Made by a program: the position numbers and the translations under genes. A stretch of DNA of 64,000 nucleotides from Camelus ferus (Eukaryota): NCBI RefSeq assembly GCF_009834535.1, contig NC_045713.1:12338001-12402000 (forward strand). The letters are read 5' to 3'. How positions within the stretch are numbered: position 1 is the stretch's first letter; each line of letters begins with the position of its first letter. Below are positions 1-44,777 of the stretch, piece by piece. The notes under the pieces were generated by a model. It did no database searches. It was not told where the DNA came from and worked only from the letters and a program-made list of their open reading frames with translations.

Positions 1-417
1 CTGGGGCTCACGCCTATGAGGCTCCTTTGTGGGCTCTGCTTTCCTGGGGGCAGCTTCCTGGAAGGCTCCAGGCTCCAGGTTCCCAACTCAGACAGGCAGG
101 AGGCAGAGGGGGAAGGGACGAGCAGGAGAGGCCGGGGGAAGGGCCCCCACCCCACACCACAGTCCTCCTCACAGCCGGGAACTCAAGGTGTCCACAGAGC
201 TTCACTTTTCTGGGCTGTTTCCACCAGTGCCTCTGAGGTGGCCATGATCTCAGGCCGGGTTCCCTCCAAAGTCTCAGAGTCTGGAGTCTGGGCCTGGAGA
301 CACCCCTTCCGGTGTCCACAGTCAGCACAGGAACGGCTCACGACAGGAGGGCGCACATGTCAACCTTGGGCCTTCAAACCCGGCACCATGCCAGCTTCTG
401 GGTGAGGGGAGCCAGCC

Positions 418-579
418 TCAGCAGCAGACAGGGCCCAAGGTCTCCTGGGGGCCACCAGCCACCTTCAAGGGCTCGCTGGGGAGGCTCTGCTCCCCGCTCT
501 GTCTGCTGGGTGTCTCCTGGGACGAGCTCCTGGGGGCCCTGGTGGCATTGGCCCGGACAGAGAGGTGATCCCAGCCCCC
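418..579 (-). CDS. TECPR1: TECPR1 last coding exon (GGWDHLS...GPVCC*)
   Basis: tttccttccag acceptor; TGA at 420-418; the 3' UTR runs off the window start. Confidence 0.95.
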   Translation of the reverse strand, partial: GGWDHLSVRANATRAPRSSSQETPSRQSGEQSLPSEPLKVAGGPQETLGPVCC

Positions 580-3500: not shown

Positions 3501-6500
3501 TTCAGAAACAGCACTGGGAGCCCGAGGGCACTTCCTGGGCTGACATTTACTTTGATCCTGGGCTCTCCTCCCCTGAAACCTCCCCTTCTCTCCACAGGAA
3601 CTGAGGTCCAGGCAGGGAGGTCCGGCCCAGGCCACACCCCGCCCCCTGTACCTCCCTCCATACCTGGCCCAGCACCTCCTCCTGACAAAATCCTTCATGG
3701 TTTTGTACCCGTGGTAGGAGCTGTAAGAGGAAGAAGCAGAAATTGAGACCATTTTGTGGAAGTTTCTGGAAAGTGACATTCTCTCTGCATGCATTACAGA
3801 GCTTGGTGTGAGCTGTGGAGTGGGCTCAGGGCAGCAGGTAACCGCAGGACACCATCCCCCTCCTCAGATTTCTCTAGCTCTGTCTGGGCCTCCCAGGGGC
3901 CAGGGCCTCCCGGGGGCTGGGGTCTCCCTGGGGCAGGGACCTCGGTGGGGCCAGGATATAGCCATTTCTAGCTAAGGGTCCTCTGAGCCCTCCCCACTCC
4001 AGGCCCCATCAGAGCTCTTCTGGGGAGCAGTCGGGCTCGGGGCCTGAGGCTGAAGGGGAGGACCCGTCCAGGAGCCCCCATGAGCCTAGGTCTGCTCAGA
4101 AGCTGTGGCCCGGGCCCCGGCCTGGGCCCTGGCTTGGACTCTGCCCTCCATCTGGACGTGACTCGTGTTCCATGAAGGGCCCACCCTGCTGATACCGTGC
4201 ACCCGATGCCAGGGCCCCCATCTTTGCTGGCTTGTCCCCTACCCTTCCTTTTATAGAAGGTCCCAACACACTGGGTCTCCTGCCTCCCAGGGTGGCCTGG
4301 CCTCACTCCATGTCGCCCCTCCACCCTGACACCCTCCCTGGTGTTGGGAGACCCCTGCCCATCACCTGGGGCCTGGCCAAGAGTCCCCCAAAACCACCCT
4401 GACTCTGGCACCCAAGTCACCTCAGGCTTCCTTGAGCCCCCAGCGCAAGGCACCAGATTCCCTGGCCTCCCAGAACCCATGCCCAGCACAGCGCAGGCAC
4501 ACCTGGGTGCCAAGGGGCCGTGCGCTCCTCCCTCAGCCCACCCCCGCCGGCCAGGTGTGTGGGCTCAGCCTCACCTGGGCCCCCCACGCCTCTCCAGCGG
4601 AGGCGGGCACACAGGGGCCTGCTCCTCGGTGCTTGTGGAGGCCGGAGATGCCCAGGGCTGCGGGGCAGGGGGCAGGGGCTCTGCTGGCTGACCAGGCCTG
4701 CAGCTCGGGGCCCCCACCCCGAGGCCCCCTCCCCCTACAGACAGAGATACTTACGCAGGGAAGTCACTGGCGTACTGCCACCCCTCCTGGTCAGTGCCCC
4801 CAGAAACGCTGAAATCCACGAACCAGTCAGAAACCTGGGGGAGGGGCGGGTCAGCGCGGGGCCTCCCCCTTCTGCAGCCCCCCCCGCCCCCCACCCGGAG
4901 CTCACCCAGGTCCACTGCAGGGATGGGGGCTTCGTGCTGGTCTTGGTGCACTCCTGCAGCCCCGTGGCGTCACTCCACATGTACCGGTCGGTGGGCAGAC
5001 CCCTGCGGAGGACAACGGGGTGAGGTGAGGGGTGAGGTGACGCCAGAGAGAGGAGGCAACAGGCCTGCCCCGCCCAAGCGCCTGGGACATTTGCATCTCC
5101 AGAGGGGTGAGGGGCGGACCCAGAAGTGCCCAGGGATGGGGACGGCCACTGGCTGACCCACATCACGCAGGCCCGGCCTACAAGCACAGCCAGGCCTCCC
5201 ACACGAGGGCTGTGGCAAGTTGTGTGGTCCGGGACCCCTCCCCTCTTTCTCTTGTGACCTGAAAAGACACGAAGCCCTAACCCCAGTACCTGGGAGTGTG
5301 ACCTTATTTGGAAATAGAGTCTTTGCAGACGATCAAATTGAGATGAGACCATCTCTGGGGTGAAGGGGCCTAACCGTCCTTATGGAGAAGGGACACTTGA
5401 ACCCAGGTTTCCCAAATTGGGGAGACGACGTGAAGACACACGGAGAAGGACATGTGACAACGGGAGTGACGCTGCCACCAGCCGAGGGAGTCCCAAGGCC
5501 ACTGGAAGCCAGGAGCAAGGCCAGAAAAGATCCTCGCTCACAGCCCTCAGAAGGCAGCGACCCCGCTGACACCTGCTCTCAGGCCTCGCGGCCTCCCCGC
5601 TGTTTGAGCCGCTCGGCCCGTGGGGTTTTGTCACAGTGGCTCTTGCTGACCGATACACTCGCGGCAGGCTCCGGGTGGCCATGGCCCTGGGGCGGCTGCC
5701 CTCTCTGTGTGGGCTGGGGAGCCCGGGCTGCCTTCCCTCTTCCAAGGACCAAGCAGGGAGTGAGGAGGACGGGGAGATGAAGCGCGCCAGCCTCCCATGT
5801 GGACCCTAGCTACTCACAGCCGATTCGGAAACTTCCAGAACACCCGTAGGCAACATGTATCAGCTGCCTTAGAAGAGCTCAAATCCTGATTTACTGGGGT
5901 GAACAGAGAGAGTCACAAATATTTACACACAAGGAAATCCTTTAACGACAGGGAAAGGTCACCCGCGGTCTACACGTCCGAGACTGAGGAGAGAGGTCAG
6001 AGAGGCCGGGCCCACCCTCAGGGACTGAGCTGGGAGGCCAGCACAGGGCATCTTTATGTGCCTGACTCTGCCCCCCTCCCGCCGGCACACGCCCATACGC
6101 AGCAACGGGCCGGAGGACGTGGACCAGAACGCTAATAGCGGTTACTCTCTCTGGTTGGTGTGATTCGAGTTGATCCTTCACGTTATTTGGTATTTGTTCT
6201 TTCCATCAATTTTGAAAGACCCACAAAAGGAAATTTAAAAGTTTGTGCCATTTATCATACACCAAAAATGTGAAATACCATTTATAAAAAATGTCAAGAC
6301 CACTATAGAGAAAATCACAAGACCTTATTAAGTGGAAATTAAAGATCTACATAAATGGAGGTATAAATTGTGTCCAGATTTTGAAGATTTAGGATTGTGA
6401 CGTAAGGTTTCTACCCAAATCAACACAGATCCAAAGCCATCCTGACCAAGACCCCAGTGCCTTTTGAAGACTGCCTCTGAAACTCATCTAGAAATGATCC

Positions 6501-9500
6501 TGGAATAGCTAAAGCTGGATGAAGAAGATGAGAGGCTTTGACAGCCAGCCATGACAACTTCCCATAGAGGGGTGGCAGCTGGAACAGCACAAGGATGCCC
6601 AGTGGCACACGGAAGAGAAGGGCTTGGGAAGAGCCACTGCCCACGTGGACACTTAAGACAAAGGTGGCCATTGTGATGCAATGGAGAAGGACAGTCTTTT
6701 CAAAAAAATGGTGTGGGTCCCTGGACAGTGAAAACCCAACAGCACCTGACCCCTACCAAATGGGACTATATAACAGAGGGTTCAGGCCGGGGGCAGGGGG
6801 CCTCTAGATCTAACTGGACAAGACAGAGGAATAAACAAACCATGACCCTCAGGCCTGTTTTGACACAGCCTACAAGCTGAGGGTGGTTTTTACATTTTAA
6901 AATGGTTGGGAAAAAATCAAAAGAAGTATAATGCTTCGGGACATGTGAAAATTCTATGCAGTTCAAATTTGTGTGCAGGTATAATGTCTTATTGGGCCAC
7001 AGTGATGCTGATTTGTTCATATGCTTTTTTCAGGCAACAGCTGCAGAGTGTGTCGTGGTGAGAGGGGCCCTAGGGCCCAGGACACCTGAACCATTTACTG
7101 TCTGGTCCTTTATAGAAAAAGTTTGCTGACTGCTGTTCCAGAGATGGGAGTTTACCCCAGGGTTAATGAGATTTCTCAAGAGAATTTTTTAAAGGCCCTA
7201 ACTTTATGTAAAAAAACAGGATGAGCAAGAGGACTACATTTAATAATTAAAAGTCATCACTAACAGGGTGAGAAGCAAGCTGCAGAACAGGAGACGTAAC
7301 AAAGGGCTCACACCTTCATATGTAAAGAGCACTAGCAAATCAAGAAACAGAGATCATCCAAGCAAAACACAGGACAGGGACCTGAAGGAGCATTTCACAA
7401 AGGAGGGCATCCAAGTGCCAGTACATGTATGAAATGTGCTCGGCCTTGTTAACCCCCAGGACACAGAAGGTAGAAGAGGGAGATACTGCTGCACTCTCAC
7501 TAACGTGGCTAAAACACAAGAAACCAGCAAAGACGTGGGGCATGCCCTGCCCGTGAGAGTGTGGACGGTACACCCACTGTGGAGAACTGGCTGTTCCAGC
7601 ACCAACTGGGTGGACTGCAACACCAGTCTGTCCCCACAAGTTAAAGGGCACAGCCCCCACTTCAGACACCAGTCACACTGCATTTCTGGCTACAAATTCT
7701 GGGGTTCACATTACCTCCTAGATATTGCTGCAACCACTCAGGAAAGCTCCCTAATTAGGATCATAGTTTCATTATAAAGGATATGAAACAGGGCCCATTG
7801 AAAGAAGAGAACCACAGTCAGGGTCTGGGAGGAGCCCCCGACACTGGGCTGGGATGAGTCTCAAGTTTGAGAACCACTGCTCTGGCCGGCCCAAAGCCTT
7901 CCAGTGGGCTCTAAAGCTAAGAAATACCGCAAGTTGCTTACTTTCTAAAACAAACAAAATACCCCAGGACAGGGTAATGAAAAATATGTTTCTGTGCTGA
8001 GTGGGCAGAAAAGAAAAACTGCATATAGTTTAGATTTTATAGTGTCCCTGCTTCTGCCCTAAACCTAGCATATTGACTATTGCGTCCCTAAGCCTCACAT
8101 TTGGAGAATGAAAATAATTTTGGTGGAGGCTACGGTAATTGGTGGAGTTTAAATTCAGCAAAACTTTAACAGAAACTTAAGTAACTACCGGCCACCCCCA
8201 CCCAAAAAGCGCCAGAGGGCATGGGGAGGGGGTGGCAGTGTTCTATTTCTTGACCCGGGTAGTGATCACACTGAAGTTTGACTTGTGGTAACTCAATGAT
8301 GTAAATAGAGCCGTATCTGTTACACATAGATTTACAGGTTATACATTTACACGTGTATTTATAGACACACAGACACATCTCACCACACACATGCATGTTT
8401 CATGCATTCTATGCATGTGACGTCTCTCAATGAGTTATAAACACGTGTTATACTTAAACGTTCAAGGAAAAAGTCCTGTAAGTGGTAAGATCCAGTTAGC
8501 TCCCCATCGGGGGCCGCACGCCAGCTCTCATGCTACGCGGGACGTGGCTGTACCCCTCGGGCATGTTTCCGTGGGCGCCCGAGCCGCTCACCTGCTGGTG
8601 TAGCCGGTGACGGGGTTCCAGCGCTGGTTCTCATAGATGTAGACGCACTTGACGTCCGACTGTGTGTAGATGTTGCTGGTGCTCCTGGCCAGGCCTGCGG
8701 GGAGAGGAGGCTGCCAGACCCGCCCCTGCCCTCCGGGCACTCGGGCTTCTGCGTGAAGCACCCCGGGACCCGGAGAGTGGATGGGGAGGGTGGGTTTATC
8801 TCACAGGGGCTGGCCAGCTTGGGTTTCTCTTCTCTGGGAATATCCCGGGGTTGCACAACCTGGATGGACGAGCCTGCGGTGCACTGAACCCCCAGCTCCA
8901 TGCTTGGTGGCACCTCCTCCCCCATTCCCATCCCACTTACCTGGTGGTGGGCAGGTGAGAGGCCCACCCAGTCACTCCTGACTAACAAAGGTGCCTTGGA
9001 CCACTCACATTACCCCTCTAAGCCCTACTTTCCTCATTTGGGAGATGGAGACTAAAGGTAATTCCTGCCTCACAAACGGAAGCTGTTAAGCCACCACAGA
9101 CGTGCGTCCCTGTGGTCTTAGTGGACCACAGTTCTACAGGGTTAGCCCCCCTCATTGTGGGGCGTGTGAGCTGTGACATGGAATGTCCCACTTCAGCATT
9201 TGATTCTGCCTCCATTTACCAATAGAAGGCACAGGGACCCTGCCTCTTAGAACTCAGGGAGTCCACCTGGGTTCAGCAAGCTCTTGGCCCCTAAGGCACG
9301 ACCCATCTAAAGGGGGGCTGGAATTCAGGCCTGGGAATCAGGAGACTGGGGTCCTACAGCTTCCCCAACTTCCCCTGAGGCCTCGTCTGTGAAATGAGGG
9401 CCCTGGAAGCTGTCTTTCTAGAATCCTCAGGGCATCTGGCACAGCTGTTGGGTGCCCAGAAGGTAGATCAGAAGCGAGGCCTGGTCTCTCGGCTCTCACA

Positions 9501-12500
9501 CCTTGTGAGCTGGTCCCAGGACTTTGAAGGCTGGCAGTGGTGAAGGTCACCTGTCAGGCAGCTGTCAGCTGAGCGTCAACACTGAGGTGGCGACTCTGGC
9601 ATGGGGCAGGGAAGCCAGCCGGGGTTGAGGGGGACAGCCCGGTAGGCGTGGCTCAGGGAGCGGGTCCTGCCACCCTCACCTTGGAAGCAGCCTCCGCCGT
9701 AGCCGCCCGTGTACACCCAGGCCGTGTGGTCGTAGCCAATGCCCCACACCACGCCCCGGCTGTTGGCCTCCACCAGCCGCAGGTGACCTCCCATCTGTCG
9801 CCAGAACCTGGAGGAGAGAGGAGGGTGGGGAGAAATGCATCTAGCAGGACTTTCCAGCCTTCTACCCCGCTTTGCCCCGTGGCCTCCCAGGGACCTCTGT
9901 TTCACTCATCTTCAGCCTCCAAATGATAGACTTTATTAAGGACAAGGGAACCTGCTTGGCTTTCCATCGGCTATTAATCAGCGAAGGCAGCTGAGAGCCA
10001 CGCAGGAGATGGTCAGGCCCCTGCGGGCAGGGCTTCAGGAGCCCCTGATCCCTGGAGCTGGGCGGACAGGGTCCAGGTCAGTGGCCCAAGTTTCACCCTG
10101 CCCTGTGGGGCCAGGGTCGGCCGGTCACGGTAGAGCAGAATGAGCCCCTCCATGGGCCGGCAGACAGCAAAGATGTCAGTGACAGGCTGTGCGGTGACAG
10201 CATGGCCTCCTGGCTCACCCTCTTGCAGGCGGAGGCCCTGCAACTGCCCCCAAATGCGACTTGTCCAACTAGGCACCGGGCACACAGGGCCGCCAAAAGC
10301 AGACAAAGGTCAGACATCCACCTTCCCTCCCTTCCTGTGTGGGGCCTCCTGGCCTTTCCTATGCTCCTCTGGTCCTCATGGGCTCTGGGGACAGTGTCAG
10401 GACAGAATCAGGAACGCTGAGTCCTCTGCTGGGTCCCCTTCCACTTCCCCAACCAAAATGCCAGGCACCCCAGGACTCTGCTCACACTGGCCCCGACAGG
10501 TGGCCCCACTCCATCTTGTGATTTTAATGCTGCCTGCAGAGCCACGCCTGCCTCACCCCTCAGCACACAGTGAGGGTCCGTGTGCCCCCTGGGGACCGTT
10601 GCCAAATGGGCCCAGGAAGACTCGAAGCCTGGGAACCAGCCAGCCAGTGGGAACCCAGCTCGGGCGGGGTGGCCAGGCCCCAGCCCCATAGGGAATGCAG
10701 CCCACTCACATCTGGTCGCAGGGCAGCAGGCGCTCGGGGGCCTCCAGGTCCGGGCTGGGCTCGCTCACGAAGATGTCCCCCTTGCAGGTGACGGACCAGA
10801 TGGCCTGCGGGGAGGGGCGGCCATGGACCCTCCGGCTCTCGCAGCAGGACAGGTTGAGCAGGGCAAGCTGACAGGGGCACGGGCTGGTCAGCGCTGGGAA
10901 GGGGTTGGCCAGCAGCCTGGCTGGGCAGCTCCCTGTCCCCGGGCTGAGGGACCCCGTCCACTCACCCAGTCGCTCATGTCCTGCTCGGTGGCGGCGGCCA
11001 GGCGCACAGGCCACCTCTGCTGCGTCCTCTCGGGGGTGTACAGGGCGAAGGAGTGCTTGGCCTCGTGCAGCATGGGGACCAGCGCCGTGACCTCGTTGAG
11101 GAACACGTGGACATACTGTTCACAGAGGCCAGGGGCACGGCTGTCACGGGCAGAGCAGGGGCCTGCGGGGCTGGGGGCACTGTGGGCCTCTGGGCAGAGC
11201 CCCCGCGTGGTGGATGGACAGGGCTGGCCTGGGGGCTCCTGATTCCAGATGTGGTCTCGGGGGCCCCCGAGGTTTGGTGCTCAGTGGGCAGGTTCCAGTG
11301 TGGAGGCCTCATTCGTGAGCAAAAGCCTTAGAGATGTTTTTGATGTTGACAAGGGCACTTAGAACCAGATGGACTGGGTTCAAGCCCCAGCCCCAGAGGG
11401 GTGGGCAGCTCGGCCTCCCCGAGCCTGATTTCTCCTCTGGAACACGAAGGCCTGTCAGCAGCTGGGAGTGAAGCTGGCACACACCTGCCCGCCACGGACC
11501 GGCCCGGGATGCCGCTACCATGGGCCAGCGCTCTGCAGACGCCGCACACGGTCCTGGGCCGAGCACCTTGGGGCCAGTGTCTCAGGGCCATCCCTGCACC
11601 CCCTCCTGTGGGCTCTCCTTCCCCAGACCTCCCACTGCTGCTCCTCCCCCTGTGGCGTCCCCCCACCTTCTTCTCCTCGTGGACCGCGTAGTAGATGAAG
11701 AGGATGCTGTCCCGAGCCCCGTCGTGCCCCATGAACTGCTCCAGGGCCACTCGGACGTCCACCCACTTGTGCGGTTTCCAGTCACACCACCACTGCAGGG
11801 CCCCCGTCTTCACCCACACCGACTGCGGCACAGACCCCAGGGGGCGAGGGGACAGAGTCACAACTGGGCCCCCAGATTCCAGCCCAGTTCCCAGCACCCC
11901 AGGGCCACCCTGGCCCCCAGTCCCTTCACTGCCTCACTGGGGGCTCCCTCCTGGCACTCCCAACTCCCCCTCTTCACCCTAAGGACTAAAGTGATGCTTT
12001 CAGACCCCTGACAGGTACTGAGCCTGGAGCCAGTGAATTCTCTGAATAACTTCCTGGTTCAGTCTGCAGGATCGGTTCTGTTACCCTATGCTGGGGATGG
12101 GGAAACTGAGGCCCAGGGAAGTTCTGGGCCTGGCCCAGGGTCACAGTGAGTCAGCAGCAAAGCTGGGACCCACTCCTGGCCTGCCAGTCTCCAGAGGCTC
12201 AATCCTGTGCCACCAGCCAAGATGCGGCCAGGTTCTCTGTGCCTGGGACACCGTGGTGCCTGAACTTGTAGGTTCTTGTAAATTTTTCTTCCTTGAATCT
12301 ACAAGGGCCTCCAGGGATGGCTTTACATCCCAGACGGCCACACCGAGGGATGGATGCACCCCTCTTCTTTCTCCTACCCATCTCGGGGCGGGCGTCCAGC
12401 AGGCACTCAGTGAATGCCGGTGGGAAACAGCCCACCTGCTCCACGGCCTGCTCATAGTGTCGGAAGTTCTCCAGCTCGCGCTTGGTCCTTTCCGTGAGCT

Positions 12501-15500
12501 GCTGGAAGATCTGCTTCCGCCAGGCGGCGGTTTGGGCAGGCGTGATGGACAACGAGAGCGTCTGCACCGAGGGGGACAGGCCTGTGGGCCGGCCAGAGCC
12601 TCAGGGCCGGGCGCCTGGCCAGTGAGGCCTCCCTTTATTTTTTTTTTTAACCGGCTCTTTCTAAGAAAGCTACCACCTCTATAAATCATCCCGTGACCCC
12701 TCCCTCCCATCGTTCACCCTGATGGGAAAGCTGATGTCCCCTCGCCCCCCGCCCCAGTTCAGCCCAGAATGGCCACCACTGCTGGGACGTGGGAGGGGAC
12801 TGGGCTGACGCTCCCCCCTTCCGACGGCCCTTGGCTGGTCTTGGAAGCCCCAGAGAGACTAGATGAGCACAGTGGGGGCACTGGCCAGGCTGGGGGCCTG
12901 TTCTGCCCCCCAGGGGTACCCTCTGGGGTGCTGGGCCGCACTTACCCGACTGGACGGCGGACCACTTGAGCACGGCGTGGGCCTCCACGGCACAGCCTCC
13001 TCCCGACACCCAGGCCCACAGCGGGGGGTAGCCGGCGCTGTAGGGGTCCTCCAAGCCCAGCGGGAGGAGGCCCAGCGAGGAGAGGTCCGGGGTCTCGGGA
13101 AAGCCGGGGGCCGAGTGGCTGGGTCCTTTCTTGGGCTCCTTCAGGTCGATGTTGGTCCAGGGCAGCTCAGCCGGGGCGGAGGCAGAGCCGGCGACCTCCA
13201 CGCCACGCTCTGCAGTCCCACCGATGTCCGGGTCAGGCCCGGGTCTCTCGGCCTCTGAGCAGGCATCTGTGTCACTGGGCCCACAGGACTCGCCTGCTGC
13301 CCCTCACCTCGTCGCCAAAGAAGCAGCCAGCGCTAGAAGGAGAGGAGCAGACCTGTGACTCCCTTGGGGGAGAAACACATGCTGTGTGACCCCCTGGACA
13401 AGTCACAGCCTCTCTGTGCTACACACATACATACACACACACACATACACACACACACACATGAATACCTGCTCCCCAGGGAGCTGGAACCTCAGGAACT
13501 TTAAAAGGGCCTCCAGCCACACCTAGAATCAGTTTGTCTTGGGTCGAAAGCTGGCGGTATTATTACTTTTTTTTTTTTGTAAAATACACGTACCATTTAA
13601 AATCATAAAATACAGTGGCATTAAGTATATTCACAATGTTGGGCAACCACTACCGAGTTCCAGAAACTTCTCATCAGCCTAAACGGAAACCCTATACATG
13701 AGAGGTCAATCTCCAACCTCCTCTTTTCCTCTTATCCCCTGGAAACCACTAATTTGCTTTCTGTCTCCATGGGGTCCACCAATTCTGAACATTTCCCGTA
13801 CACGGCATCATACAGCATGTGACCTTTGGTGACTGGCTGCTGTCACTTAGTGTGATGATGTCAAGGTTCATCTGTGTTGTAGACAATACTTCGTTCCTTT
13901 TTATTGGTAAGTAATATTCCATTGTATGACACACCACATTATATTCACCTATTCATCCACTGAAGGACACTTGAGTGGTTTCCACATTTTGGCTGCTGTG
14001 AAGGGCACTTCTATAAATATTCCTGTACCAATTTTGTCTGAACATCTGTTTTTGGTTCTCCTGGGTACTTGCCCAGGAGTGAAATGGCTAGGTCATCTAG
14101 TAACTCTATCCGTAACTTCTTGAGGAACTGCTGGCCTATTTTCTAAAGTGGCTGGTCTTCCACCCCCACCAGCAGCGCAGGAGAGTTCCAGTGTCCCCAC
14201 ATCTTGTTAACACACGCTACTGTCTTTCTTTCTGATTACATCAGCTGTGGGGCGGGAGGCGGTATCTCATTGTGGGTTTATTCGCATTTCCCCCATGACT
14301 CATGACCGTGTTCATCGTTCGCATGTCTGCTTTGGAGGAATGTCTGTTCAAGTCCTTTGCCTTCTTTGAGTCATTTCTCTTTCTGTTGTTCGTTGTGAGG
14401 GCCCTTTTTCTAGTCTAGGTACTAGACCTTGTCCAACATGTGATTAGCCAATATTCTCTTCCATTCTGGGGATTGTCTTTTCATTTTCTTGATAGTGTCC
14501 TTTGATGCACAGAAGTTCTTAATGTTGATGAAGTCTGATTTATCTGTTTTTTCTTTAGTTTTCATGCCTTGGGTGTCATAAATAAGAAGCCACAGCCAAA
14601 TCCAGGGTCGTGAAGTTTTGGCATCAGTGGTTTGGGAAGTTCTCAGCTGACTCCAATGTGCTGTTTGAGGACCACCAGCTGAAGAGCCTAAACCCTCAGG
14701 TAAGTGTGAGCAGACCCTGCCTGGCTGGCCTCCCGGCTTCTCTGGGCTAACAGTGCAGCCAAGTGCTGACCACCAAGCTGGGGGAGCAGAGGGGTGTGGA
14801 CCAGGGGCCGAGCAGAGCCCAGGCTGCAGACAGGAGTGTGGCCAGCTGGGGAGTGTGGTGCCAAGGGCCCCTGTGCCGTGGGACCGGGCAGGTGAGTACT
14901 GGGGGCGCCTTCTCCATCATGGAGCTAAAACACGCCCAGCTGAGATGCCAAGTCATCTGCTGTGTTCTAACAGCCAGTGGGCAGGGCCAGGACGCATCCA
15001 CACTCCCCAGCCCCGGGGATCTCAAGGTGTCGTCCCTAGAACTGCAGCGGCAGTGTACCTGGGACCTTGCAAGAAATGCAAAATTTCAAGAAAGAAGCTC
15101 TGGGGTAGGGGGTGGAAATCCATAGGAATGAGGCCTCCAGGTGATTCTGCGGCAGGTCCAAGTTTGAGGTCCCTGCTCCAGATGAGAGAGACCCTCCATC
15201 TTTCTAGCGTTCCTTTGACAGGGGCCTGAGCACCCTCCCCGCAGAGAAGCTCGTCCTCTCCCCGATCTCGAGGCCTCAGGACCAGAGGGCCAGCCCTGCT
15301 TGGGAACCGTCCCCGGTTCCCACATGGTTGGATATCCCAGCCTCGCTCCCGCCTCGGGTCGAGAAGGACACTGGGTACAGGAAGGGAGGAGGCCGTGGCT
15401 CTCGTGGGTCAGGACCTGGTTTTCTCCTGCCTGGGACAAAGCCCAGTGTCCAGCTGAGAGGCCTTCCTGACACCGTCCACCGAGGCTGCCAGCAGCCCTC

Positions 15501-18500
15501 CTGGACCGACCCCACGGGGCCCCGCCACCTCGATCACCTGAGGAGGCTGGACGAGCTGCCCGAGTGCGAGCGGTCACACTCCCGGCCAGCGACAATGGCC
15601 TTCCACGTCTTCCCGCTGAGCTCGCTCTGGGTGACACCCTGACGGAAGTACAAGGCCCGGTCCTCCCAGCCGATGCCCCAGACCTGGAACACAGAGGTGC
15701 TGTCAAGGGGGAGGCCAGAGCAGACAGGGGGGCTCCCTTCCCTTTGGGGATGTTGGGGGAGGACGAGGGTGGGGAGGGCACCCCAAGTCTGGAGGACAGG
15801 GCTGCCAATGCGGGCAGGGGTTCCCTGAGTGCGTGTGTGTTAGGGGCTGTGAGGTGGGCGCAGGACTGGCCACAGCACAAGCTCAGGAGAAGCAGGGGCC
15901 CCGTCCTGGCTCCTCGGCCTCAGGCAGACCCAGGACTCTGGGGAGATGGGGTCCAGAGGAGGGGTGGGCGCTATCGGAACACGAGGTCCACCTATGTCCC
16001 CTTCTTCCGTGTGGCCTTTGGTGGGCAGGAGCTGCTCCCCAAGTGAACTCAGAGCCTGGTCTTGGTCTTTTCAAAGATGCAAAATAACCTCCTTGATTCT
16101 GACCCCATATTCTATGGGAAGAGTGGCCAAGTGGGCCTCCTGCCCTCTGCCTTTGGGCGCTGAGGACAGAAGGTGTGCCAGGCAGGGGAGGGGCCAGGGA
16201 GCAGCCCACCTGGGGCCTCAGCCTTGGGGTTGCCTGAAGGCGGAGCCGCAGCCCCAGGTGGCCTTGCCGGGAGGCTGCGGCGTCTCCATCACTTGGTCCT
16301 GGCGGTCCAGCCTGAGTGCTCAGTCCTATGAGCACCAGCTAGTGCCTGTCTCGCCCCTGACCTCGGCGGGCCCGGCTCATCACTGGGGTGGGTGACGGGG
16401 GATGTGGGGGCACAGGAAAGGCCATCCTCCCACCCCAGGAAGAGCTTCTAGTGCAACGGGAAAGGTGTCACCTACACACCTTGAGTCTTAAAAGTAGCCA
16501 AACCACATCACCTACAAGCCGGGGCTACGCTGTGGGACCACACACGTGATGCTTCAGAGACGCTGCAGCTACAGAGTTGGAAGATCTGTTTCATCCTTTA
16601 CTCGGTGATTTGATTTCACCCAAATATTTCTTAAAAAGCCTGCCCGGCTCCAGGATGCATGTCCCTCCCCCAGCTCAGTGCTCACTGCCACTGCTCTGAG
16701 AGTCCTCGGGAGAGGGACCGGGGCAGGTGGGGGCTGTGGGACTCAGGTGGAAGCAGCCCCCTGCGAGCCCTCCCATGCTGGCATCACGAGCATCCCCGGT
16801 GGAGAGGGACAGCGAGGGCCCCAGATCTGACACTCGTGCTGCCGACCGGTCCCCAGGGGCCAGGGCTCGGAACCACGCACACACCTGGTCATTTAGCCCC
16901 ACATTCACCATCATCATTTCTCCAACCATCTCAATCCAGCTGGTGCCACAGGGGTTGTAAGAGTTGACGCCTCTTCGGAACCAAACCTGGGAAAGTGGGA
17001 AGAAACAAGCCTCCCTGGAGGACCGCTGGAACAGAAGGCTTTTTAAGACTGGGGAAGAACGAATGATTTGGTCCCTTGGTTCATGCCACAAATGAGCATA
17101 GCACATCCTCCATCTGAGTCCCTCTTCCCCACACCCCTGCTGCGGCGTCCCCTGGGCTTGGCTCCATCCCACGGGGCTGAGGGTCACCTGCTCCCGGCCA
17201 CACCTGTCCTGGTAGGTCCCGCCCATCCTCTGGCTCTGGGCACTGCCCCTGCAGAAGTCAAGGTGTTGGCTGTTTGACTGCACAGTGAGGGCAGGAGGCA
17301 GGAGCTTCCTGGGTGCTAGCTGGCAGGCAGCATCTCAAATCCAGACCCTGACCTTTGGGCTGACCGGTGACATCCCGCCCCCCATGAACCTGGGTGCAAT
17401 CCCCACCTTAGCTCAGCCTGGACGCTTGGAAAAGACCGCTTTGTCCAATCAAGTCTGCCTCTATGTCAGATAATGGTCTCAAATGATATTATTGAGGAAA
17501 ACCATTTTTCTAAATTCATTATTTGAAGAAATAACATATTTGGGGTCTATTCTTAGTGCTTTAGGAAACAGTCCCTTTAAACCTAACTTTTTTCACATCA
17601 ACTTGTAAAAATACATAAAATCCAACCAAATTCCCCTCAAGCCCACCCATCTGGGGCTCCACTGCTCACCTGGCAGCCACACCCCACCCCCACCCCAGGC
17701 CCTGCTTCATCCCCCGATGACTACCCCTACCCATTCTGGGGGTGACCGGTTACAGGAGAAAACCCTCAACACCCTTTCATAAAAATACCTAGAATGTCTA
17801 CAACGTCTCCTTAACCCAAAGGAAATTTGCACGAATATTTGTCTGAAGACTAAGTGAATTGCTCATATACATCACATTCTCTGCTCATTTAATCTCTTGC
17901 TTTGCAAGAGGCTTAGAAGTTCTGGTTTCTGGGAAGTGGGGTGCTCAGGGACCCATGGAGGGGACAGTTGTCTGTATTTTCTCAGGCCGGCATGTGGCCT
18001 GAGACTTGGGGAACTTCAGCACTGGAGACAGACTCAGACATGTGGGTGACCCACCCCCTGGAAGCTATGGGGTGCCCCTGACTTGGGGTCAGGAAGAGAT
18101 CCTGGAAGCAACGTGAAGTCAGCTTATTTTACTGGACCTGCTTCTGATAAAGTAAGAATGACGAGCTCTGGCCAGGAGCAAAGGGGCCCGTTCAGCTGGC
18201 TGAGGGTTTCAGAAAACTACTTTCTGATTACTTGAAATGTTATGGCCTATCCAGCGATAAATATGGTTGTTCTGCACTTGGTACAGGGACACACGCAGCG
18301 GGGGCACCAAACCCCTTGGAGATCACCAAGACATCAACAGCAAACGCACGGTGCTTGGCTGATATCGGATTTGTTCTAAAGGTTAACCACACTCCTGAGA
18401 ACAAAAAACCCCACAAACCCTCTACATTAAATGGAGCCCTCAGACACAGCCCCCAGGGACCCCGCCTTACTTTCCGGTCCTTGGTGACAGCCCAGACCAC

Positions 18501-21500
18501 ACCAACTCCCACGGAGACGTGCATGATCCCGTTTTCAGACATGGGAGACTCCACGATGGACCAAGAACTTCCTGCCCGGCACAGAAGAAAGCGCAAGTGG
18601 CCGGTCACCGAGAGCTCGGGGGAGGGGCTGGGCGCCCCCCTGCCCCCACCTCTCCCAGCACCGGGTGCAGGGCTGCCCACCTTTAGGGTTGTTCCTGTTG
18701 ATTCCTTCCCGGACCAGGGCCTGTCCCTCCCAGAGTGTCACCCACAGCAGGTCGTGGGGCCCACAGCTGATCTGAACCGCCTCCCCCGGGGTGTCCACCA
18801 GGGACCACGATGAGCCTTCGGGGTTGGGGTGGCTGACGTCCTCTCTGTACCACACCTGGGTGGCGGGAGAGACCCGAGGGAGGGTCAGGCAGGGTGATTC
18901 CAGAGCTCCGTGGCCAGATCAGCTGCCCAAGCTTGGCTGTATTAGCATCAGCATGTGTACGGGCCAAGCGTGGAGTCTCCAGGGGACCGGCGACCAGGAT
19001 GACCGGATCCTCCTGACCTCGCTCACCCTGCCCCCACTGCCGCCGGGATCCTCGAGTCAGATTAGATGACTCCCCACCCCTGCTGAAAAATGGGATCGTG
19101 ACACCGACACCTGGACTTTGGCGGTCCTAGAGGAACAGACCTCATCTGTCCTCTGCTTGTCTTTTGGGAACTTCAGCCCCAGCCCGAGTGTCCTGCGCCC
19201 CCTAGTGGCAACACACTCTCAGGACACCCATCTCTAAGGAAGCTGGAGACCCCTGGTGAAGTGAGAAAACCACCCAGGTCCCTACACAGGAATGTCTAAA
19301 ACGTCCATTTCTTAAGCTGAAGAGAGGGAGCATAATACAGTATTTACGGCTGAGCCATTTGCTCTTATTGTCCAAACTGTCTGGCTCATTTCATCTGGAG
19401 GGGAGTAAACTTTGCTGTGAGGTCCAGGAGGGCTGGGGACCCCCTCCAAGGAGCTGTCTTCACGCTGGGGACCACAGCCCCCCAACCCCATCACCTTGTG
19501 TTTTTTTTCTTTTTAAAATTCTTTATTAGTTAGTGAGATTTATTACTCATATTAATTTTATTTATAAACTTTAAATTCTATGCTATCTAAACAGACTGCC
19601 TTAACATTTGTGAATGGTGGGATAGGATCTCACTTATAATAAAAAAAAAGAAACATGTTCAATGATTTAGTTTGGACAGTATTTTCCAAGGGAAAAATAG
19701 AAAACAGAGTAGACTGGTGATAACCCTCCCTCATCACCACCGTTGCTCACAAATGCATGTGTTATGGAGCTCCCCTGCCCCGCTGTGCACATGATGTTTT
19801 GCTGGGTGCTTCTTCAAACACCTGATTCAGTAAATCAATCAGCAGCTGGATGACAGCAGCCCTCCCGCTCTGGCAGCCTCCCCTGTGCTACCTGCTCACC
19901 TGGGGGCCATCTGCCTGCCCAGCTCCTCCTGAGCCCAGGGTCCCGGTCACACATTTTACGGATGTCAGGAGCGAAGCAGAGCAGGGGTGGCTCCCAGCCG
20001 GCACCACTTTCCAACTCATTCTCCCCTCTTTTTGCGTCCAGGTGACCCCTGGATCAGGGCGCTGGCTGTCCCGGGCCAGCTCCCCACCACCCTTCACGTG
20101 GCTCAGAGGCAACAACTGTGGGTGGACCTAAGCTCAGACCAAGAGGGACCAGGAGGTAAGCCTGATAAAAACCTGCGGTTGCTGTTCCAAAGCCAACCAG
20201 AGAATTTTGGTCAGTTTGCGTTAAGAGAACTGAATAGTCATCAAGTATACTCTACAGCCACAGCCAAAGTAAGGGTGGGGTCGCTAGCACATGGGACCAC
20301 CCACGTCACTGCTGCTGTCAGGGGTGGGTTGTATTCCTTTGCTAAGTTCACAGACTCCTTGAGAGAAGAATCCCCTCTCCTCTCTAAACATCTACCCCCC
20401 ATGCCCCCCACCCATCCTCCCATCCAAACAGCCATCCATCCATCCATCCATCATCCATCATGCACCCATCCACCCACCCACCCATCCATCCACCCCCACC
20501 CACCCCCAAACCGTCAATCACCATCTGCTCACCCATCCACAATACTACTAGAGACTGCTGTGTAGGAGGTACCACAAGGGCGCTGGCAGGGAGCTGAGAA
20601 TCTGTCTCAGGAGACAATACTCATGGTATCTGAGCTGAGGGTGGGCCCTGATCAGTGCTCCGGGGCTCAGAGGAGGGACAGGCGGGGACCAGGAATGGGT
20701 GGAAGGTCAAAGTCTCCTGGGAGGAGCAGGACCCAGAAGGTCCACAGGACAGCAGGATCCACAGGAGTGGGGACTCTGGGGACCCCAGGAACAGGCTGCC
20801 TGCTCAGGGTATCCCCAGCTGCGGGGACAGGAGGTGAGAAGGTCTCGAGGGCAGCCCTCCTCCTCCCCCCACCTCTGGGAGGACACTGGCAGACCAGCCT
20901 CCTCACCTCTGGTCCAGGGCACCGGGGGGCACAGGCCTCACCTTTCCCTGCAGTGACACGGCCCACACAGACAGGCGGCCCACGGGCTCGTCAATGATCT
21001 CCCAGCCCCCCACAGAGATGTCGTTGAAGGGATCAGGCAGTTGCTGGGGGTCATCCTCAGCCGGAATCTGAAATTAGGTGGAAGGCAGTAGCAGTCAGCA
21101 CCTGTGGGCACCTGGGCCAGGAGGCAGCAGTCCTCCCCTCCTGCTGGACCTGGGGACATGCCACACCCCCCCTCCCCCCGCTTTCCCTCCAGCGTGCCTG
21201 CTCCCCACTCCCCCAGCACGCCGCCTTCCATCCTCCAGCCTGGCCCCAGCTGACTTCCCAGAGAAGGCAGCATCCTGACAGAGGGCTCCTGGCCCTGGGT
21301 CCCTGCTGCCCTGTCCTCCCTCTGTTGGCCACCAGGCTTGGGCTGCCATCCCCAGGAGGTCACTGCTGCCCCAGCACGGAAGACAGATGCACACGCAGGG
21401 GCTCAGCTCTGTGCTTCGTGATGGCCTGACTGCTGTGACTCCATCCCACCTAGAAGGGGGCCGATCACAGAACACGGTCCCACCGGGTGAGCCTTCTGTG

Positions 21501-23055
21501 ACACCAGCCGTCTCCTGGCCCTCTGGCGGCTCCCAGCCCTGGGCTGGCAGCCCCACCTCTGGGCACAGACCCTGCAGAGAGGCCGGGTGAGGGCCTGAGG
21601 CCTTCCTCTCATTCAAGGTCCTGTAGGACCCCAGTCCAGGCCTTGCGTCCCTAAGTTGGTTTTTCTAGGTCACTTGAAAAATACAAGAGTGGCTCCTGCG
21701 GGGGAAAGGGGAGGCATCACAGCACAGACTGAGCCTCCGCCTGGGACAGGGTGGCCTGGAGACCAGGTCAAGACAAGTTCTGTGCTGTCCTGGGCCACAG
21801 TCTGGGCCGGCTCCCTGTGCGGCCACCTCCCAAACGAAGCAACACGCAGGACTGCAGCCTTCCCAATGGGGGAGAGTCAAAGCCCAGGTCCCAGGGTGGG
21901 CCTGGTGCCCCGGGCACAGGCGGGGAGAGTGGGACTGCCCTCTGGCCCTGCTCCGCCCCGGGCCACACCGGCTCCCAGACCTTGGCCCAGGCGTCCCGGG
22001 ACTTGTATCTCCTGTACCGGATCCACCTCCGCCGCCGGACACAAGAATTCCACTTCTTGTCTCTCGTGTAGGTGGCGGGGAAGTCGATGGCATACGTCCA
22101 TCCCTGAAATACCAAGGTGGGGAGGGCGACCGTGTCAGGCTGTCGAGGAAGAAGTGAAAGAGCCAGGAGAGCGGGGGGCAGGGCACAGCATGGCCCGAAG
22201 CATCACCCCCACGGGTCCCAAGCGGGGAGTGCAGGGTGCTGGGGACAGCCCTGGGGGGGGGCTGGCTGAGCCAAAAGCGCCCCCTCCCCGCGAGGGCGCC
22301 ACGGCGGGAACTGAGCTCACCTACCCCTTTCTCGGTGGGCTCCCCTCCAAAGTTCTCATCCACGTACCAGTCCGACTCCCACTCCCAATGCGGCGAGGGC
22401 AGCGCCACCCCGTCCAGCGCCCGGTGCTGGAGCCCACTCACGTCGCTCCACGGCCAGCGGTCACTTGGCAGGAGCGTCTCACAGAAGCCGCCCACAGGGT
22501 TCCAGCGCTGGGGGTCAGGGCAGAGACCAGCCTTAGGCCCGGAGCATCAGAAGGGCAGAGGACCTACCACCAGCAACAGTGCCCCGAGCAGCAGAGGGCA
22601 CGGCTGACCTGGGCCCCTGGAACCTGCCTGGAGCCCATCCCGTGCAGACCTGGCCAGCTGCCTGGATGAGGACACAACAGGGGCTTGGGCCCCAGCAATC
22701 CCGGATCCTACACCACTTGGATCTTCCGAGGAATGGAAGAAAAGAATGCGGGTATGGGCTGGGAGCCGGGGGTGCAGGGGCGCGATGTCCCAGCAAACCA
22801 ACCCAGATGCTCGCTGGCTCGTGACCCCACCTGATTCTCATAGGCCTCCTCCCGGCGGCGGATGGGGACGTCGCTGGCGCACACATACACGTAGACCTGG
22901 TTGTCGCAGGCAATGCCCCAGCAGCACTGGGTGGCTGCGCTGACCCGCTTGAACTCCAGCTGGGCGTCCCTGCACAGCTCCCAGGACTGCCCGGCTGTGG
23001 AGAGCGTGAACACCCTCCCGAACAGGTCTACCGCCCACAGCACTGAGCTGGGCAT
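418..23055 (-). CDS. TECPR1: Tectonin beta-propeller repeat-containing protein 1, whole spliced CDS (24 coding exons; 1146 aa if the 1-nt frameshift near 13295 is corrected)
   Basis: Translated exons match recalled human TECPR1 from MPSSVLWAVDLFGRV to ...GPVCC*. Exon lengths sum to 3442 nt = 3x1147+1. All junction phases are compatible. W154 (DysF), the W175-A-K-I178 LIR and the ATG5-interacting helix TAAWRKQIFQQLTERTKRE are present. Confidence 0.97.
721..840 (-). CDS. TECPR1: TECPR1 coding exon 23 (VWVIANK...YGIG)
   Basis: ttccag acceptor; GGG|gtgagc donor; 40 codons. Confidence 0.95.
988..1094 (-). CDS. TECPR1: TECPR1 coding exon 22 (NLWYRQG...PLDQ)
   Basis: ctcctag acceptor; CAG|gtttgg donor; phase 1-0. 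Confidence 0.94.
1813..1905 (-). CDS. TECPR1: TECPR1 coding exon 21 (DCWYHIP...ALDEN), ends at a GC donor
   Basis: gtcacag acceptor; ACG|gcaagt donor; phase 1-1. Confidence 0.9.
2625..2760 (-). CDS. TECPR1: TECPR1 coding exon 20 (GSSWLHV...SQPA)
   Basis: cccccag acceptor; CTG|gtgagt donor; phase 0-1. Confidence 0.95.
3039..3219 (-). CDS. TECPR1: TECPR1 coding exon 19 (KCKLVTS...LNPA)
   Basis: cccagcag acceptor; GCT|gtaagc donor; phase 2-0. Confidence 0.94.
3664..3720 (-). CDS. TECPR1: TECPR1 coding exon 18 (SYHGYKT...CWAR)
   Basis: cttacag acceptor; CAG|gtatgg donor; phase 2-2. Confidence 0.94.
4755..4834 (-). CDS. TECPR1: TECPR1 coding exon 17 (VSDWFVD...DFPA)
   Basis: ctcccccag acceptor; TGC|gtaagt donor; phase 0-2. 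Confidence 0.95.
4906..5002 (-). CDS. TECPR1: TECPR1 coding exon 16 (GLPTDRY...QWTW)
   Basis: ctccgcag acceptor; TGG|gtgagc donor; phase 2-0. Confidence 0.95.
5211..5657 (+). mobile_element. MaLR solo LTR (MLT1A-D class)
   Basis: TG start; 'gtgtgaccttatttggaaatagagtctttgcaga' and 'ttttgtcacag...ataca' are hallmark MLT1 segments. Confidence 0.75.
6230..8470 (+). mobile_element. Decayed L1 (L1M/L1ME) ORF2 and 3' UTR fragments, interrupted by MER58 and MER5 pieces
   Basis: A-rich plus strand; 'aaagatctacataaatggag', 'agtctttcaaaaaatggtg' and the L1 3' motif 'gttctatttcttgacccgggtagtg'. Confidence 0.7.
6800..7137. mobile_element. MER58B-like hAT-Charlie DNA transposon
   Basis: 'tttttacattttaaaatggttgggaaaaaatcaaaagaag' and terminal 'tttactgtctggtcctttatagaaaaagtttgctgac'. 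Confidence 0.75.
8592..8694 (-). CDS. TECPR1: TECPR1 coding exon 15 (LARSTSN...GYTS)
   Basis: ccgcag acceptor; CAG|gtgagc donor; phase 1-2; ENQRWNP DysF motif. Confidence 0.95.
9680..9807 (-). CDS. TECPR1: TECPR1 coding exon 14 (FWRQMGG...GCFQ)
   Basis: ctcctccag acceptor; AAG|gtgagg donor; phase 2-1. Confidence 0.95.
10710..10867 (-). CDS. TECPR1: TECPR1 coding exon 13 (LALLNLS...PCDQM)
   Basis: cctgtcag acceptor; GAT|gtgagt donor; phase 0-2. Confidence 0.94.
10966..11115 (-). CDS. TECPR1: TECPR1 coding exon 12 (YVHVFLNE...DMSDW)
   Basis: aacag acceptor; TGG|gtgagt donor; 50 codons. Confidence 0.94.
11667..11822 (-). CDS. TECPR1: TECPR1 coding exon 11 (SVWVKTG...HEEKK), PH domain
   Basis: ccgcag acceptor; AAG|gtgggg donor; 52 codons. 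Confidence 0.95.
12085..12200. mobile_element. MIR
   Basis: 'ggggaaactgaggcccagggaag...cccagggtcacag' MIR core. Confidence 0.7.
12436..12581 (-). CDS. TECPR1: TECPR1 coding exon 10 (LSPSVQ...EQAVEQ), ATG5-interacting region
   Basis: cccacag acceptor; CAG|gtgggc donor; phase 1-0. Confidence 0.95.
12946..13332 (-). CDS. TECPR1: TECPR1 coding exon 9 (AGCFFGDEVRGS / GESCGPSDTDA...WSAVQS), with an apparent +1 frameshift near 13295
   Basis: ccttctag acceptor; TCGG|gtaagt donor; 387 nt, whereas the flanking phases require a length of 3n+2; the human-like peptide changes frame after GS. Confidence 0.88.
13421..13461. repeat. Imperfect (CA)n microsatellite
   Basis: Directly visible. Confidence 0.9.
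13566..14620 (-). mobile_element. L1MA/L1MB 3' end in antisense, inserted in a MER5-like element (halves at about 13490-13560 and 14620-14680)
   Basis: T-tract start; 'atattccattgtatg', 'ccactgaaggacacttgagtggtttccac', 'tttgatgcacagaagttcttaatgttgatgaagtc'. Confidence 0.8.
15538..15683 (-). CDS. TECPR1: TECPR1 coding exon 8 (VWGIGWED...SSLLS)
   Basis: ttccag acceptor; CAG|gtgatc donor; phase 0-2. Confidence 0.94.
16885..16986 (-). CDS. TECPR1: TECPR1 coding exon 7 (VWFRRGV...LNDQ)
   Basis: ttcccag acceptor; CAG|gtgtgt donor; 34 codons. Confidence 0.95.
18471..18571 (-). CDS. TECPR1: TECPR1 coding exon 6 (GSSWSIV...TKDRK)
   Basis: gggcag acceptor; AAA|gtaagg donor; phase 1-0. Confidence 0.94.
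18681..18855 (-). CDS. TECPR1: TECPR1 coding exon 5 (VWYREDV...NNPK)
   Basis: cccag acceptor; AAAG|gtgggc donor; phase 0-1. Confidence 0.95.
20392..20535. repeat. (CCAT/CCAC)n low-complexity repeat
   Basis: Directly visible. Confidence 0.85.
20942..21067 (-). CDS. TECPR1: TECPR1 coding exon 4 (IPAEDDPQ...SLQGK)
   Basis: atttcag acceptor; AAG|gtgagg donor; 42 codons. Confidence 0.95.
21981..22103 (-). CDS. TECPR1: TECPR1 coding exon 3 (GWTYAIDF...DAWAK)
   Basis: tttcag acceptor; AAG|gtctgg donor; 41 codons; contains W154. Confidence 0.95.
22325..22507 (-). CDS. TECPR1: TECPR1 coding exon 2 (RWNPVGG...EPTEKG), N-terminal DysF domain
   Basis: ccccag acceptor; GGG|gtaggt donor; 61 codons, phase 0-0. 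Confidence 0.93.
22831..23055 (-). CDS. TECPR1: TECPR1 coding exon 1 (MPSSVLW...EAYENQ); exon acceptor at 23066
   Basis: ATG in gccATGC context; cttcctgcag acceptor; CAG|gtgggg donor; 75 codons. Confidence 0.95.
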
Positions 23056-40360: not shown

Positions 40361-40537
40361 NNNNNNNNNNNNNNNNNNNNNNNNNNNNNNNNNNNNNNNN
40401 NNNNNNNNNNNNNNNNNNNNNNNNNNNNNNNNNNNNNNNNNNNNNNNNNNNNNNNNNNNNNNNNNNNNNNNNNNNNNNNNNNNNNNNNNNNNNNNNNNNN
40501 NNNNNNNNNNNNNNNNNNNNNNNNNNNNNNNNNNNNN
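40361..40537. other. Assembly gap (177 N)
   Basis: Directly visible. Confidence 1.

Positions 40538-44301: not shown

Positions 44302-44304
<3 letters not shown>

Positions 44305-44372
<68 letters not shown>
44305..44372. repeat. Interrupted (GT)n microsatellite in the BRI3 promoter
   Basis: About 33 GT units with one GG interruption at 44333-44334. Confidence 0.97.
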
Positions 44373-44373
<1 letters not shown>

Positions 44374-44777
44374 TCTCCTCGTGGTGTGACTCTGGGGCCG
44401 CAGATGTGGGGTGGGGAGGGGGAGGAGCAGGCGCAGCCGCGAAGCGGACCGTGTCACCGCCACCAAGCTACCGGCGGGGTGGTCGAGGGCGGGCGCGGCC
44501 CCTTTAAGACGCCGCCGGTCCCGCCCCGCACCGCCCCCTCGCCGGGAGCCGTGCCACGTGATCCGGGTCTTGTGACTGGCGGGGGGAGGCGCGGGGGGGA
44601 AGCCCGCGGCGCCCGCCTCCAGGGGGCCCAGCCCCGCCGCCGCCACCGCCGCCCGCGAGGAGCGGGTCCCGCCGCCGGGCGTCCGGGCGTCCCCGCGAGT
44701 CCGAGCCGGAGCCGGAGTCCCAGCGGGAGCGGGAGCGCGAGCGGGAGCCGGGCCGGGCGCGGTGGGCGCCGCCCGCC

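What the first reader, a model, noticed from the sequence alone, without database searches (positions are those of the whole stretch)
13272..13332. One-base frameshift in the ninth TECPR1 coding exon of an otherwise intact gene
Seen: exon 8 ends in phase 2, so this exon reads AGCFFGDEVRGS and then RRVLWAQ* (TGA at 13274-13272). The human-like continuation G-E-S...PSDTDA...ELPWTNIDLKEP lies in another frame, after one extra base near 13295 (minus strand GGC AGC A GGC GAG). The exon is 387 nt where 3n+2 is needed. The site is a short (GCA)2 repeat, not a homopolymer. Taken literally, the mRNA encodes a ~413-aa NMD-prone product that keeps the N-terminal DysF/LIR/propeller and loses the ATG5-binding region, PH domain and C-terminal half. 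Known: TECPR1-ATG5-ATG12 acts as an ATG16L1-independent E3 for ATG8 conjugation on damaged membranes. Inference: all 23 other exons and W154 are intact, so this is an assembly error or a very recent loss-of-function allele. A weak AG before 13274 (ctgtgggcccag|TGAC) would restore the frame with loss of ~19 aa.
Basis: partly seen in the sequence, partly recalled or inferred. Interest (0 to 1): 0.72.

Follow-up and report, generated by a model that had tools for sequence, protein, structure and literature searches.

The report
Assembly-only frameshift in camel TECPR1
The one extra base that seems to break the autophagy gene TECPR1 is really in this sequence, but only in this one wild-camel genome assembly and in none of four other camelid assemblies, so it is most likely a sequencing or assembly slip and not a lost gene.

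Summary
On the minus strand, TECPR1 coding exon 9 (13332..12946) is 387 nt. Read in the phase left by exon 8 it gives AGCFFGDEVRGS, then RRVLWAQ and a TGA at 13274-13272. The conserved continuation (GESCGPSDTDA...ELPWTNIDLKEPKK) lies one frame over, after an extra A at 13295.

The window is 100% identical over 24,055 nt to Camelus ferus assembly GCA_009834535.1. Four other camelid assemblies lack that one base and have a 386-nt open exon: C. bactrianus, C. dromedarius, an older independent C. ferus assembly, and alpaca. With base 13295 removed, the window's 24 exons, all with standard splice sites, translate exactly to XP_032315934.1. NCBI already labels that protein 'LOW QUALITY PROTEIN'.

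No indexed sequencing run was credited with more than 1 of the 3 sampled words that span the site. The same DNA runs hold 88-90% of the words of the surrounding 701 bases. One camel RNA run joins exon 8 to the normal acceptor at 13332.

Read-level proof failed: a filter left out every contig over the site.

Verdict: consensus error in one assembly (about 85%). A real allele private to the reference animal remains possible (about 11%). Interest is low.

The parts
13295..13295 (-). The extra base (A on the minus strand, T on the plus strand) that shifts the frame. It is private to assembly GCA_009834535.1.
   Evidence: The alignment of five assemblies has a single gap column here. It is the only gap in exon 9 against L002, L003, L004 and L005.
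12946..13332 (-). TECPR1 coding exon 9. It is 387 nt here and 386 nt in the other camelid assemblies.
13272..13274 (-). Premature TGA reached in the frame inherited from exon 8. The literal product is 413 aa.
   Evidence: translation; exon lengths and phases
15538..15683 (-). TECPR1 coding exon 8, ending in phase 2. An RNA contig joins it to 13332.
   Evidence: In one search the loose letters of the X37 contig are the reverse complement of the exon 8 end.
13275..13276 (-). An exon starting at 13274 would be 329 nt and in frame, and would lose 19 aa. Its polypyrimidine tract is weak and no use of it was seen.
   Evidence: 9 of 20 pyrimidines against 16 of 20; only the junction at 13332 was seen
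12436..12581 (-). TECPR1 coding exon 10 (GLSPSVQTLSLSITPAQTAAWRKQIFQQLTERTKRELENFRHYEQAVEQ). It continues the conserved frame of exon 9.
418..23055 (-). The whole TECPR1 coding region: 24 exons with standard splice sites. With base 13295 left out it translates exactly to the 1146-aa XP_032315934.1.

Best explanation
The window is the TECPR1 locus of the wild Bactrian camel assembly GCA_009834535.1. The extra A at 13295 is most likely an uncorrected single-base insertion error in that assembly's consensus, sitting in a GC-rich exon. The camel's real gene would then be intact: exon 9 of 386 nt, 24 exons, a 1146-aa protein, spliced at the normal acceptor 13332.

Shown: the base is in this assembly and in none of four others, and removing it restores exactly the protein model that NCBI deposited.

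Inferred: the base is absent from the reference animal's own DNA.
For: - The window equals GCA_009834535.1 CM020785.1, 100% over 24,055 nt with no gaps.
- The extra base is absent from C. bactrianus GCA_048773025.1, C. dromedarius GCA_000803125.3, the independent older C. ferus GCA_000311805.2 and alpaca GCA_048564905.1. In all four, exon 9 is 386 nt and open.
- All 16 annotated camelid TECPR1 proteins examined read ..DEVRGSGESCGPSDTDA...
- The protein model made from this very assembly is labelled 'LOW QUALITY PROTEIN'. It equals the window's 24 exons minus base 13295, so this base is the gene's only defect.
- All 31 words of 31 letters that span the base are absent from the four other assemblies.
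- No indexed run is credited with more than 1 of the 3 sampled site words. The 14 DNA runs hold 0.88-0.90 of the words of 12800-13500 and none approaches 1.00. That is the level expected of a genome without the base: the older C. ferus assembly computes to 0.908 and C. bactrianus to 0.954.
- Unverified leads from this scan: 91 first-stage notes mention frameshifts in 559 windows of this genome (some are other pseudogenes or gene losses). Genes named include SLC4A2, OTOG, RTEL1 and IL2RB. One follow-up judged such a frameshift an assembly error. That rate looks higher than I would expect for real frameshift alleles in one animal (my estimate, not computed).
Against: - The site is not a homopolymer (GCAGCAGG), where long-read consensus errors are most common.
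- Across about 24-28 kb this assembly has only two private indels, this one and +GGG in a poly-G run at 23723, against 12 substitutions versus the older C. ferus assembly. So the locus is not visibly riddled with errors, and that indel-to-substitution ratio is also compatible with natural variation.
- No read or contig of the reference animal could be laid over 13295. In one search the DNA runs X1 and X3 and the RNA run X15 gave nothing because a filter left their contigs out.
- Several runs are credited with 1 of the 3 site-spanning words. A pure error predicts 0 of 3. This is unexplained.
Confidence: 0.85

Rival explanations
1. The insertion is a real, very recent loss-of-function allele carried by the reference wild Bactrian camel, heterozygous or homozygous, and the assembly reports it faithfully. 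Its mRNA would reach a premature stop in exon 9 of 24 and would be expected to undergo nonsense-mediated decay. Any protein made would be 413 aa, lacking exon 10 onwards and with it the C-terminal half.
For: The site is not a homopolymer. Private indels are few at this locus, so a true variant is not excluded on local error rate. Wild Bactrian camels are a small population in which private harmful alleles can persist (general knowledge). Some runs are credited with 1 of 3 site-spanning words.
Against: The base is absent from another assembly of the same species and from three other camelids. No run holds 2 or 3 of the 3 site words, and no DNA run exceeds 0.90 of the words of the surrounding region. 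The rest of the gene is perfect: 23 exons identical to the annotated protein and every splice site standard. So any loss would have to be extremely recent. My prior for a real frameshift in a given conserved gene of one animal is well under 1% (my estimate from general knowledge). Apparent frameshifts look far more frequent than that in this assembly (unverified notes).
Confidence: 0.11
2. The extra base is real, and the gene is rescued by splicing exon 8 to the internal AG at 13276-13275. That would give a full-length protein lacking 19 residues (AGCFFGDEVRGSGESCGPS).
For: The arithmetic works: an exon from 13274 to 12946 is 329 nt (3n+2) and the junction would read S|DTDA.
Against: This needs the base to be real in the first place. 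The acceptor has a poor polypyrimidine tract, 9 of 20 against 16 of 20. The only junction seen in RNA joins exon 8 to 13332. The deleted AGCFFGDEV motif is conserved from marsupials to placentals.
Confidence: 0.02
3. The error arose from a heterozygous or polymorphic neighbouring variant, for example A/G at the first base of the GGC codon. The consensus step would have merged the two bases into 'AG', so that a real substitution lies behind the false insertion.
For: This would explain why exactly 1 of 3 site-spanning words is credited to many runs of two organisms. Words ending at 13295 or 13294 would be shared with such an allele (reasoning).
Against: It is purely inferential. All four other assemblies show GGCAGCGGCGAG with no such substitution. 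Only 2 of the 31 possible words would be shared, so the chance that one of them was sampled is about 19% (my calculation).
Confidence: 0.02

Closest known systems
XP_032315934.1, 'LOW QUALITY PROTEIN: tectonin beta-propeller repeat-containing protein 1 [Camelus ferus]' (P0183)
   Same: It is the annotation of this very locus. Its 1146 residues equal the translation of the window's 24 exons once base 13295 is left out. The locus DNA is identical to the window.
   Different: The deposited protein reads through the defect. The genomic sequence, read literally, stops after 413 codons.
TECPR1 of Camelus bactrianus (XP_074201788.1, P0172), C. dromedarius (KAB1263504-7) and Vicugna pacos (XP_072799422.1, P0173)
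   Same: Exon 9 keeps the same exon boundaries. The C. bactrianus protein differs from the C. ferus model at one residue (243 A against G), and the alpaca protein at 17 residues.
   Different: Their genomic exon 9 is 386 nt and open. None carries the extra base.
Residual single-base insertion or deletion errors in long-read genome assemblies, which annotation pipelines flag as frameshifted or 'low quality' models
   Same: A one-base insertion private to one assembly, in a GC-rich exon of an otherwise perfect and conserved gene, already compensated by the annotation pipeline. Many similar apparent frameshifts were noted elsewhere in this genome (unverified).
   Different: The site is a short GCAGCA context, not a homopolymer. 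The sequencing technology of this assembly could not be checked in the papers held.

Membership tests
TECPR1 (tectonin beta-propeller repeat-containing protein 1) orthologue | Domain make-up: tectonin/Hyd_WA propeller repeats plus two DysF (Pex24p-type) inserts | tested here: met
   Pfam scan of P0183, which equals the window's exons minus one base: Hyd_WA 2.5e-85 (8 stretches), Tectonin 3.3e-45, Pex24p 1.5e-19 (2 stretches).
TECPR1 (tectonin beta-propeller repeat-containing protein 1) orthologue | Full-length match to annotated TECPR1 of close relatives | tested here: met
   24 exons translate exactly to C. ferus XP_032315934.1. There is 1 difference from C. bactrianus and 17 from alpaca over 1146 aa. 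All named homologues are TECPR1.
TECPR1 (tectonin beta-propeller repeat-containing protein 1) orthologue | ATG5-interacting region and PH domain between the two propellers | not tested
   The sequence of exons 10-13 is present and identical to the annotated protein. No domain model or structure comparison was run for these parts, and Pfam reported no PH hit at E<=0.001.
   Exon 3 reads GWTYAIDFPATYTRDKKW..., and counting from G137 puts a W at position 154. Its role was not tested.
Assembly consensus error (false frameshift) | Absent from independent assemblies of the same and sister species | tested here: met
   Absent in GCA_000311805.2 (same species), GCA_048773025.1, GCA_000803125.3 and GCA_048564905.1.
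Assembly consensus error (false frameshift) | Absent from the raw reads of the assembled animal | tested here: inconclusive
The second laid no DNA contig because of a filter. In the word index no run holds more than 1 of 3 site words. Which runs come from the reference animal is not known.
Assembly consensus error (false frameshift) | The rest of the gene shows no sign of decay | tested here: met
   23 other exons are identical to the annotated protein, all splice sites are standard, and there is no second defect.
Real loss-of-function allele or pseudogene | The defect is seen in independent DNA or RNA of at least one animal | tested here: not met
   No run holds the full set of site-spanning words. 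Four other assemblies lack the base. This is not proof of absence in the reference animal.

The most novel reading that the evidence does not exclude
The extra base is a genuine allele private to the reference wild Bactrian camel. That animal, from a critically endangered species, would then carry a natural TECPR1 knockout allele: a 413-aa truncation expected to undergo nonsense-mediated decay and to lose the ATG5-binding half of the protein.
Probability: 0.11. Interest if true: 0.35.

Novelty: not a real feature. Interest (0 to 1): 0.07.

Why it matters
Taken at face value, the sequence suggests that camels have lost TECPR1. The evidence says the gene is intact in camelids and the break belongs to one assembly. 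The practical value is as a warning. Single-base frameshifts in GCA_009834535.1/GCF_009834535.1 should be checked against the other camel assemblies before any gene loss is claimed. NCBI's 'LOW QUALITY PROTEIN' flag on the corresponding model already marks this case.

Tried and rejected

2. Laying contigs over 13235-13415 gave nothing for the DNA runs X1 and X3 or the RNA run X15. The RNA run X37 gave only two contigs, and both end at 13305. That is where spliced and unspliced paths merge in a 31-letter word graph, so nothing covers 13295.

3. I searched the protein collection for exon-9 ORFs from camel read assemblies, both the frameshifted form (119-aa piece) and the intact form (239-aa ORF from L002). 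The best hit was 77% identical, so no camel ORFs were found. This says nothing for either allele.

4. A pattern scan of metagenome contigs, allowing 0-4 bases at the site, found nothing.

5. A PDB sequence search with the exon-9 piece found nothing.

6. A 33-nt 'mini-intron' from GAG|GTGAGG (13307) to CCCAG| (13275) was rejected. A multiple of three does not change the frame, the join would read GAG TGA (a stop), and 33 nt is far below the working intron size in mammals.

7. The assembly's methods paper is not held. Papers that cite the assembly say nothing about its error rate.

8. Pfam scans of 12 long ORFs, most of them in 27-64 kb, found no domains.

Full report
**Observation.** On the minus strand the exon starts after the acceptor ttctag at 13332 and ends before gtaagt at 12946, so it is 387 nt. 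Exon 8 (15683..15538) ends ..SSSSLL plus 'ag', which is phase 2. Read in that frame, exon 9 gives S-AGCFFGDEVRGS-RRVLWAQ and then TGA at 13274-13272. The next frame reads GESCGPSDTDACSEAERPGPDPD...ELPWTNIDLKEPKK...LKWSAVQS up to the donor. That includes the 413-aa literal product, which follows from the exon lengths.

**What gene and what genome.** A profile-free search with the downstream piece of the exon returned mostly short exon-sized ORFs from various mammals, plus one 914-aa protein. All seven sequences fetched show the conserved motifs, and five of the seven read ..AGCFFGDEVRGSGES/GDS.. through the site. Using the 914-aa marsupial hit as a full-length query gave named TECPR1 proteins from many vertebrates. 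The Camelus bactrianus protein matched the window best.

Its 90% cluster holds TECPR1 of C. bactrianus, C. dromedarius and Vicugna pacos. It also holds a Camelus ferus entry labelled 'LOW QUALITY PROTEIN' (XP_032315934.1). An older C. ferus model sits in its own cluster. All 16 camelid proteins examined read ..DEVRGSGESCGPSDTDACSEAE...

The genomic locus of the C. ferus model (GCA_009834535.1, CM020785.1) is 100% identical to the window over 24,055 nt without a gap. So the window is that assembly.

**The decisive comparison.** I fetched the same locus from four other assemblies:
- C. bactrianus GCA_048773025.1
- V. pacos GCA_048564905.1
- the older, independent C. ferus GCA_000311805.2
- C. 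dromedarius GCA_000803125.3

In all four, exon 9 is 386 nt (3n+2) and translates without a stop. The only gap against the window is the A at 13295: GGCAGC-GGCGAG against GGCAGCAGGCGAG.

An exact spliced alignment was then run on the window with base 13295 left out. It finds 24 exons with standard splice sites, and their translation equals XP_032315934.1 residue for residue, stop codon included. So this base is the gene's only defect. It accounts for the LOW QUALITY label, and the annotation pipeline had already compensated for it.

**Evidence from sequencing runs.** This part is weaker than hoped.
- Fourteen DNA runs of two camel organisms hold 0.88-0.90 of the 76 sampled words of 12800-13500. 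None is near 1.00.
- For comparison, assemblies without the base share 0.954 (C. bactrianus), 0.908 (older C. ferus) and 0.833 (dromedary) of all words of that stretch. The words spanning 13295 are always among the missing ones.
- A 61-base query in which every word spans 13295 had 3 sampled words. No run was marked as holding it. Twelve runs are credited with 1 of 3, the other eleven indexed runs with none, and no run with 2 or 3.
- Neither a pure error nor a real allele predicts the 1-of-3 value. It may be an index artefact or a neighbouring variant. I could not resolve it.

The second laid no DNA contig at all. It did show, in RNA run X37, one contig joining the end of exon 8 to 13332 (word depth 19.7) and one unspliced contig (word depth 25.6). 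Both end at 13305, which is where the two paths merge in a 31-letter word graph. So the normal acceptor is used, but nothing covers 13295.

**Error or real allele?**

For an error:
- The base is private to one assembly and absent from another assembly of the same species.
- The rest of the gene shows no decay at all.
- NCBI flagged the model.
- No run supports the full sequence at the site.
- This scan's own first-stage notes mention frameshifts 91 times in 559 windows of this genome. Some of these are other pseudogenes or gene losses. Genes named include SLC4A2, OTOG, RTEL1, IL2RB and WDR72, and one follow-up concluded assembly error. These notes are unverified leads. The rate looks higher than I would expect for real frameshift alleles in one animal (my estimate).

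Against an error:
- The site is not a homopolymer.
- Over 24-28 kb this assembly has only two private indels, this one and +GGG in a poly-G run at 23723. It has 12 substitutions against the older C. ferus assembly. So the local error rate is not visibly high.
- I could not see the reference animal's reads.

I put the consensus error at about 0.85 and a real private allele at about 0.11.

**If the base were real.** The stop lies in exon 9 of 24, far upstream of the last exon junction, so the transcript should be a target of nonsense-mediated decay (the established 50-55-nt rule). Any protein would keep the N-terminal DysF and propeller part and lose everything from exon 10 on.

But the site has a weak polypyrimidine tract, 9 of 20 against 16 of 20. 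It would also delete the AGCFFGDEV motif, which is conserved from marsupials to placentals. A 33-nt 'mini-intron' from GTGAGG at 13307 does not help either: the frame is unchanged and the join reads GAG TGA.

**Comparison with what is known.** The locus is an ordinary TECPR1 orthologue. Pfam finds Hyd_WA, Tectonin and two Pex24p/DysF stretches, and the protein differs by one residue from C. bactrianus. Nothing about the gene itself is unusual.

The feature under review is best filed as 'not a real feature'. It is an artefact that the public annotation had already marked. No literature on TECPR1 loss in camelids was found.

Noticed in passing
window 23713-23735 (minus strand, about 670 nt upstream of the TECPR1 start codon): A poly-G run is three G longer in this assembly than in C. 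bactrianus GCA_048773025.1 and the older C. ferus assembly. It is the only other indel private to this assembly in the 24-28 kb compared. It could be a homopolymer length error or a real polymorphism.
   Followed up: partly
window 13265-13325: Twelve runs (DNA and RNA, two organisms) are credited with exactly 1 of the 3 sampled words spanning the extra base, yet none of the 31 possible words exists in the four assemblies that lack the base. The cause could be an index artefact or a neighbouring variant. It remains unexplained.
   Followed up: partly
window 40361-40537: A run of 177 N, the only one in the window.
   Followed up: no
window 44000-52000: A GC-rich block (0.59-0.68 GC) with sustained positive GC skew (+0.09 to +0.17) and negative AT skew on the plus strand. 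It holds a (GT)34 microsatellite at 44305-44372 and long ORFs, including 44005-45270 of 421 aa. Eight of these ORFs were scanned and none has a Pfam domain. It is not a tandem array. It may be a CpG island or the transcribed 5' region of a neighbouring gene.
   Followed up: partly
window 13421-13450 (intron 8, minus strand): An imperfect (GT)n microsatellite lies about 90 nt upstream of the exon 9 acceptor. Words here are also missing from the dromedary assembly (word starts 13430-13448), so its length probably varies among camels.
   Followed up: no
window 7916 and 22261: C. bactrianus GCA_048773025.1 has one extra C at each place relative to this window: outside a long run at 7916, and in a poly-C run at 22261. 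The older C. ferus assembly showed no gap against the window at either place. So other camel assemblies carry private single-base indels too.
   Followed up: partly
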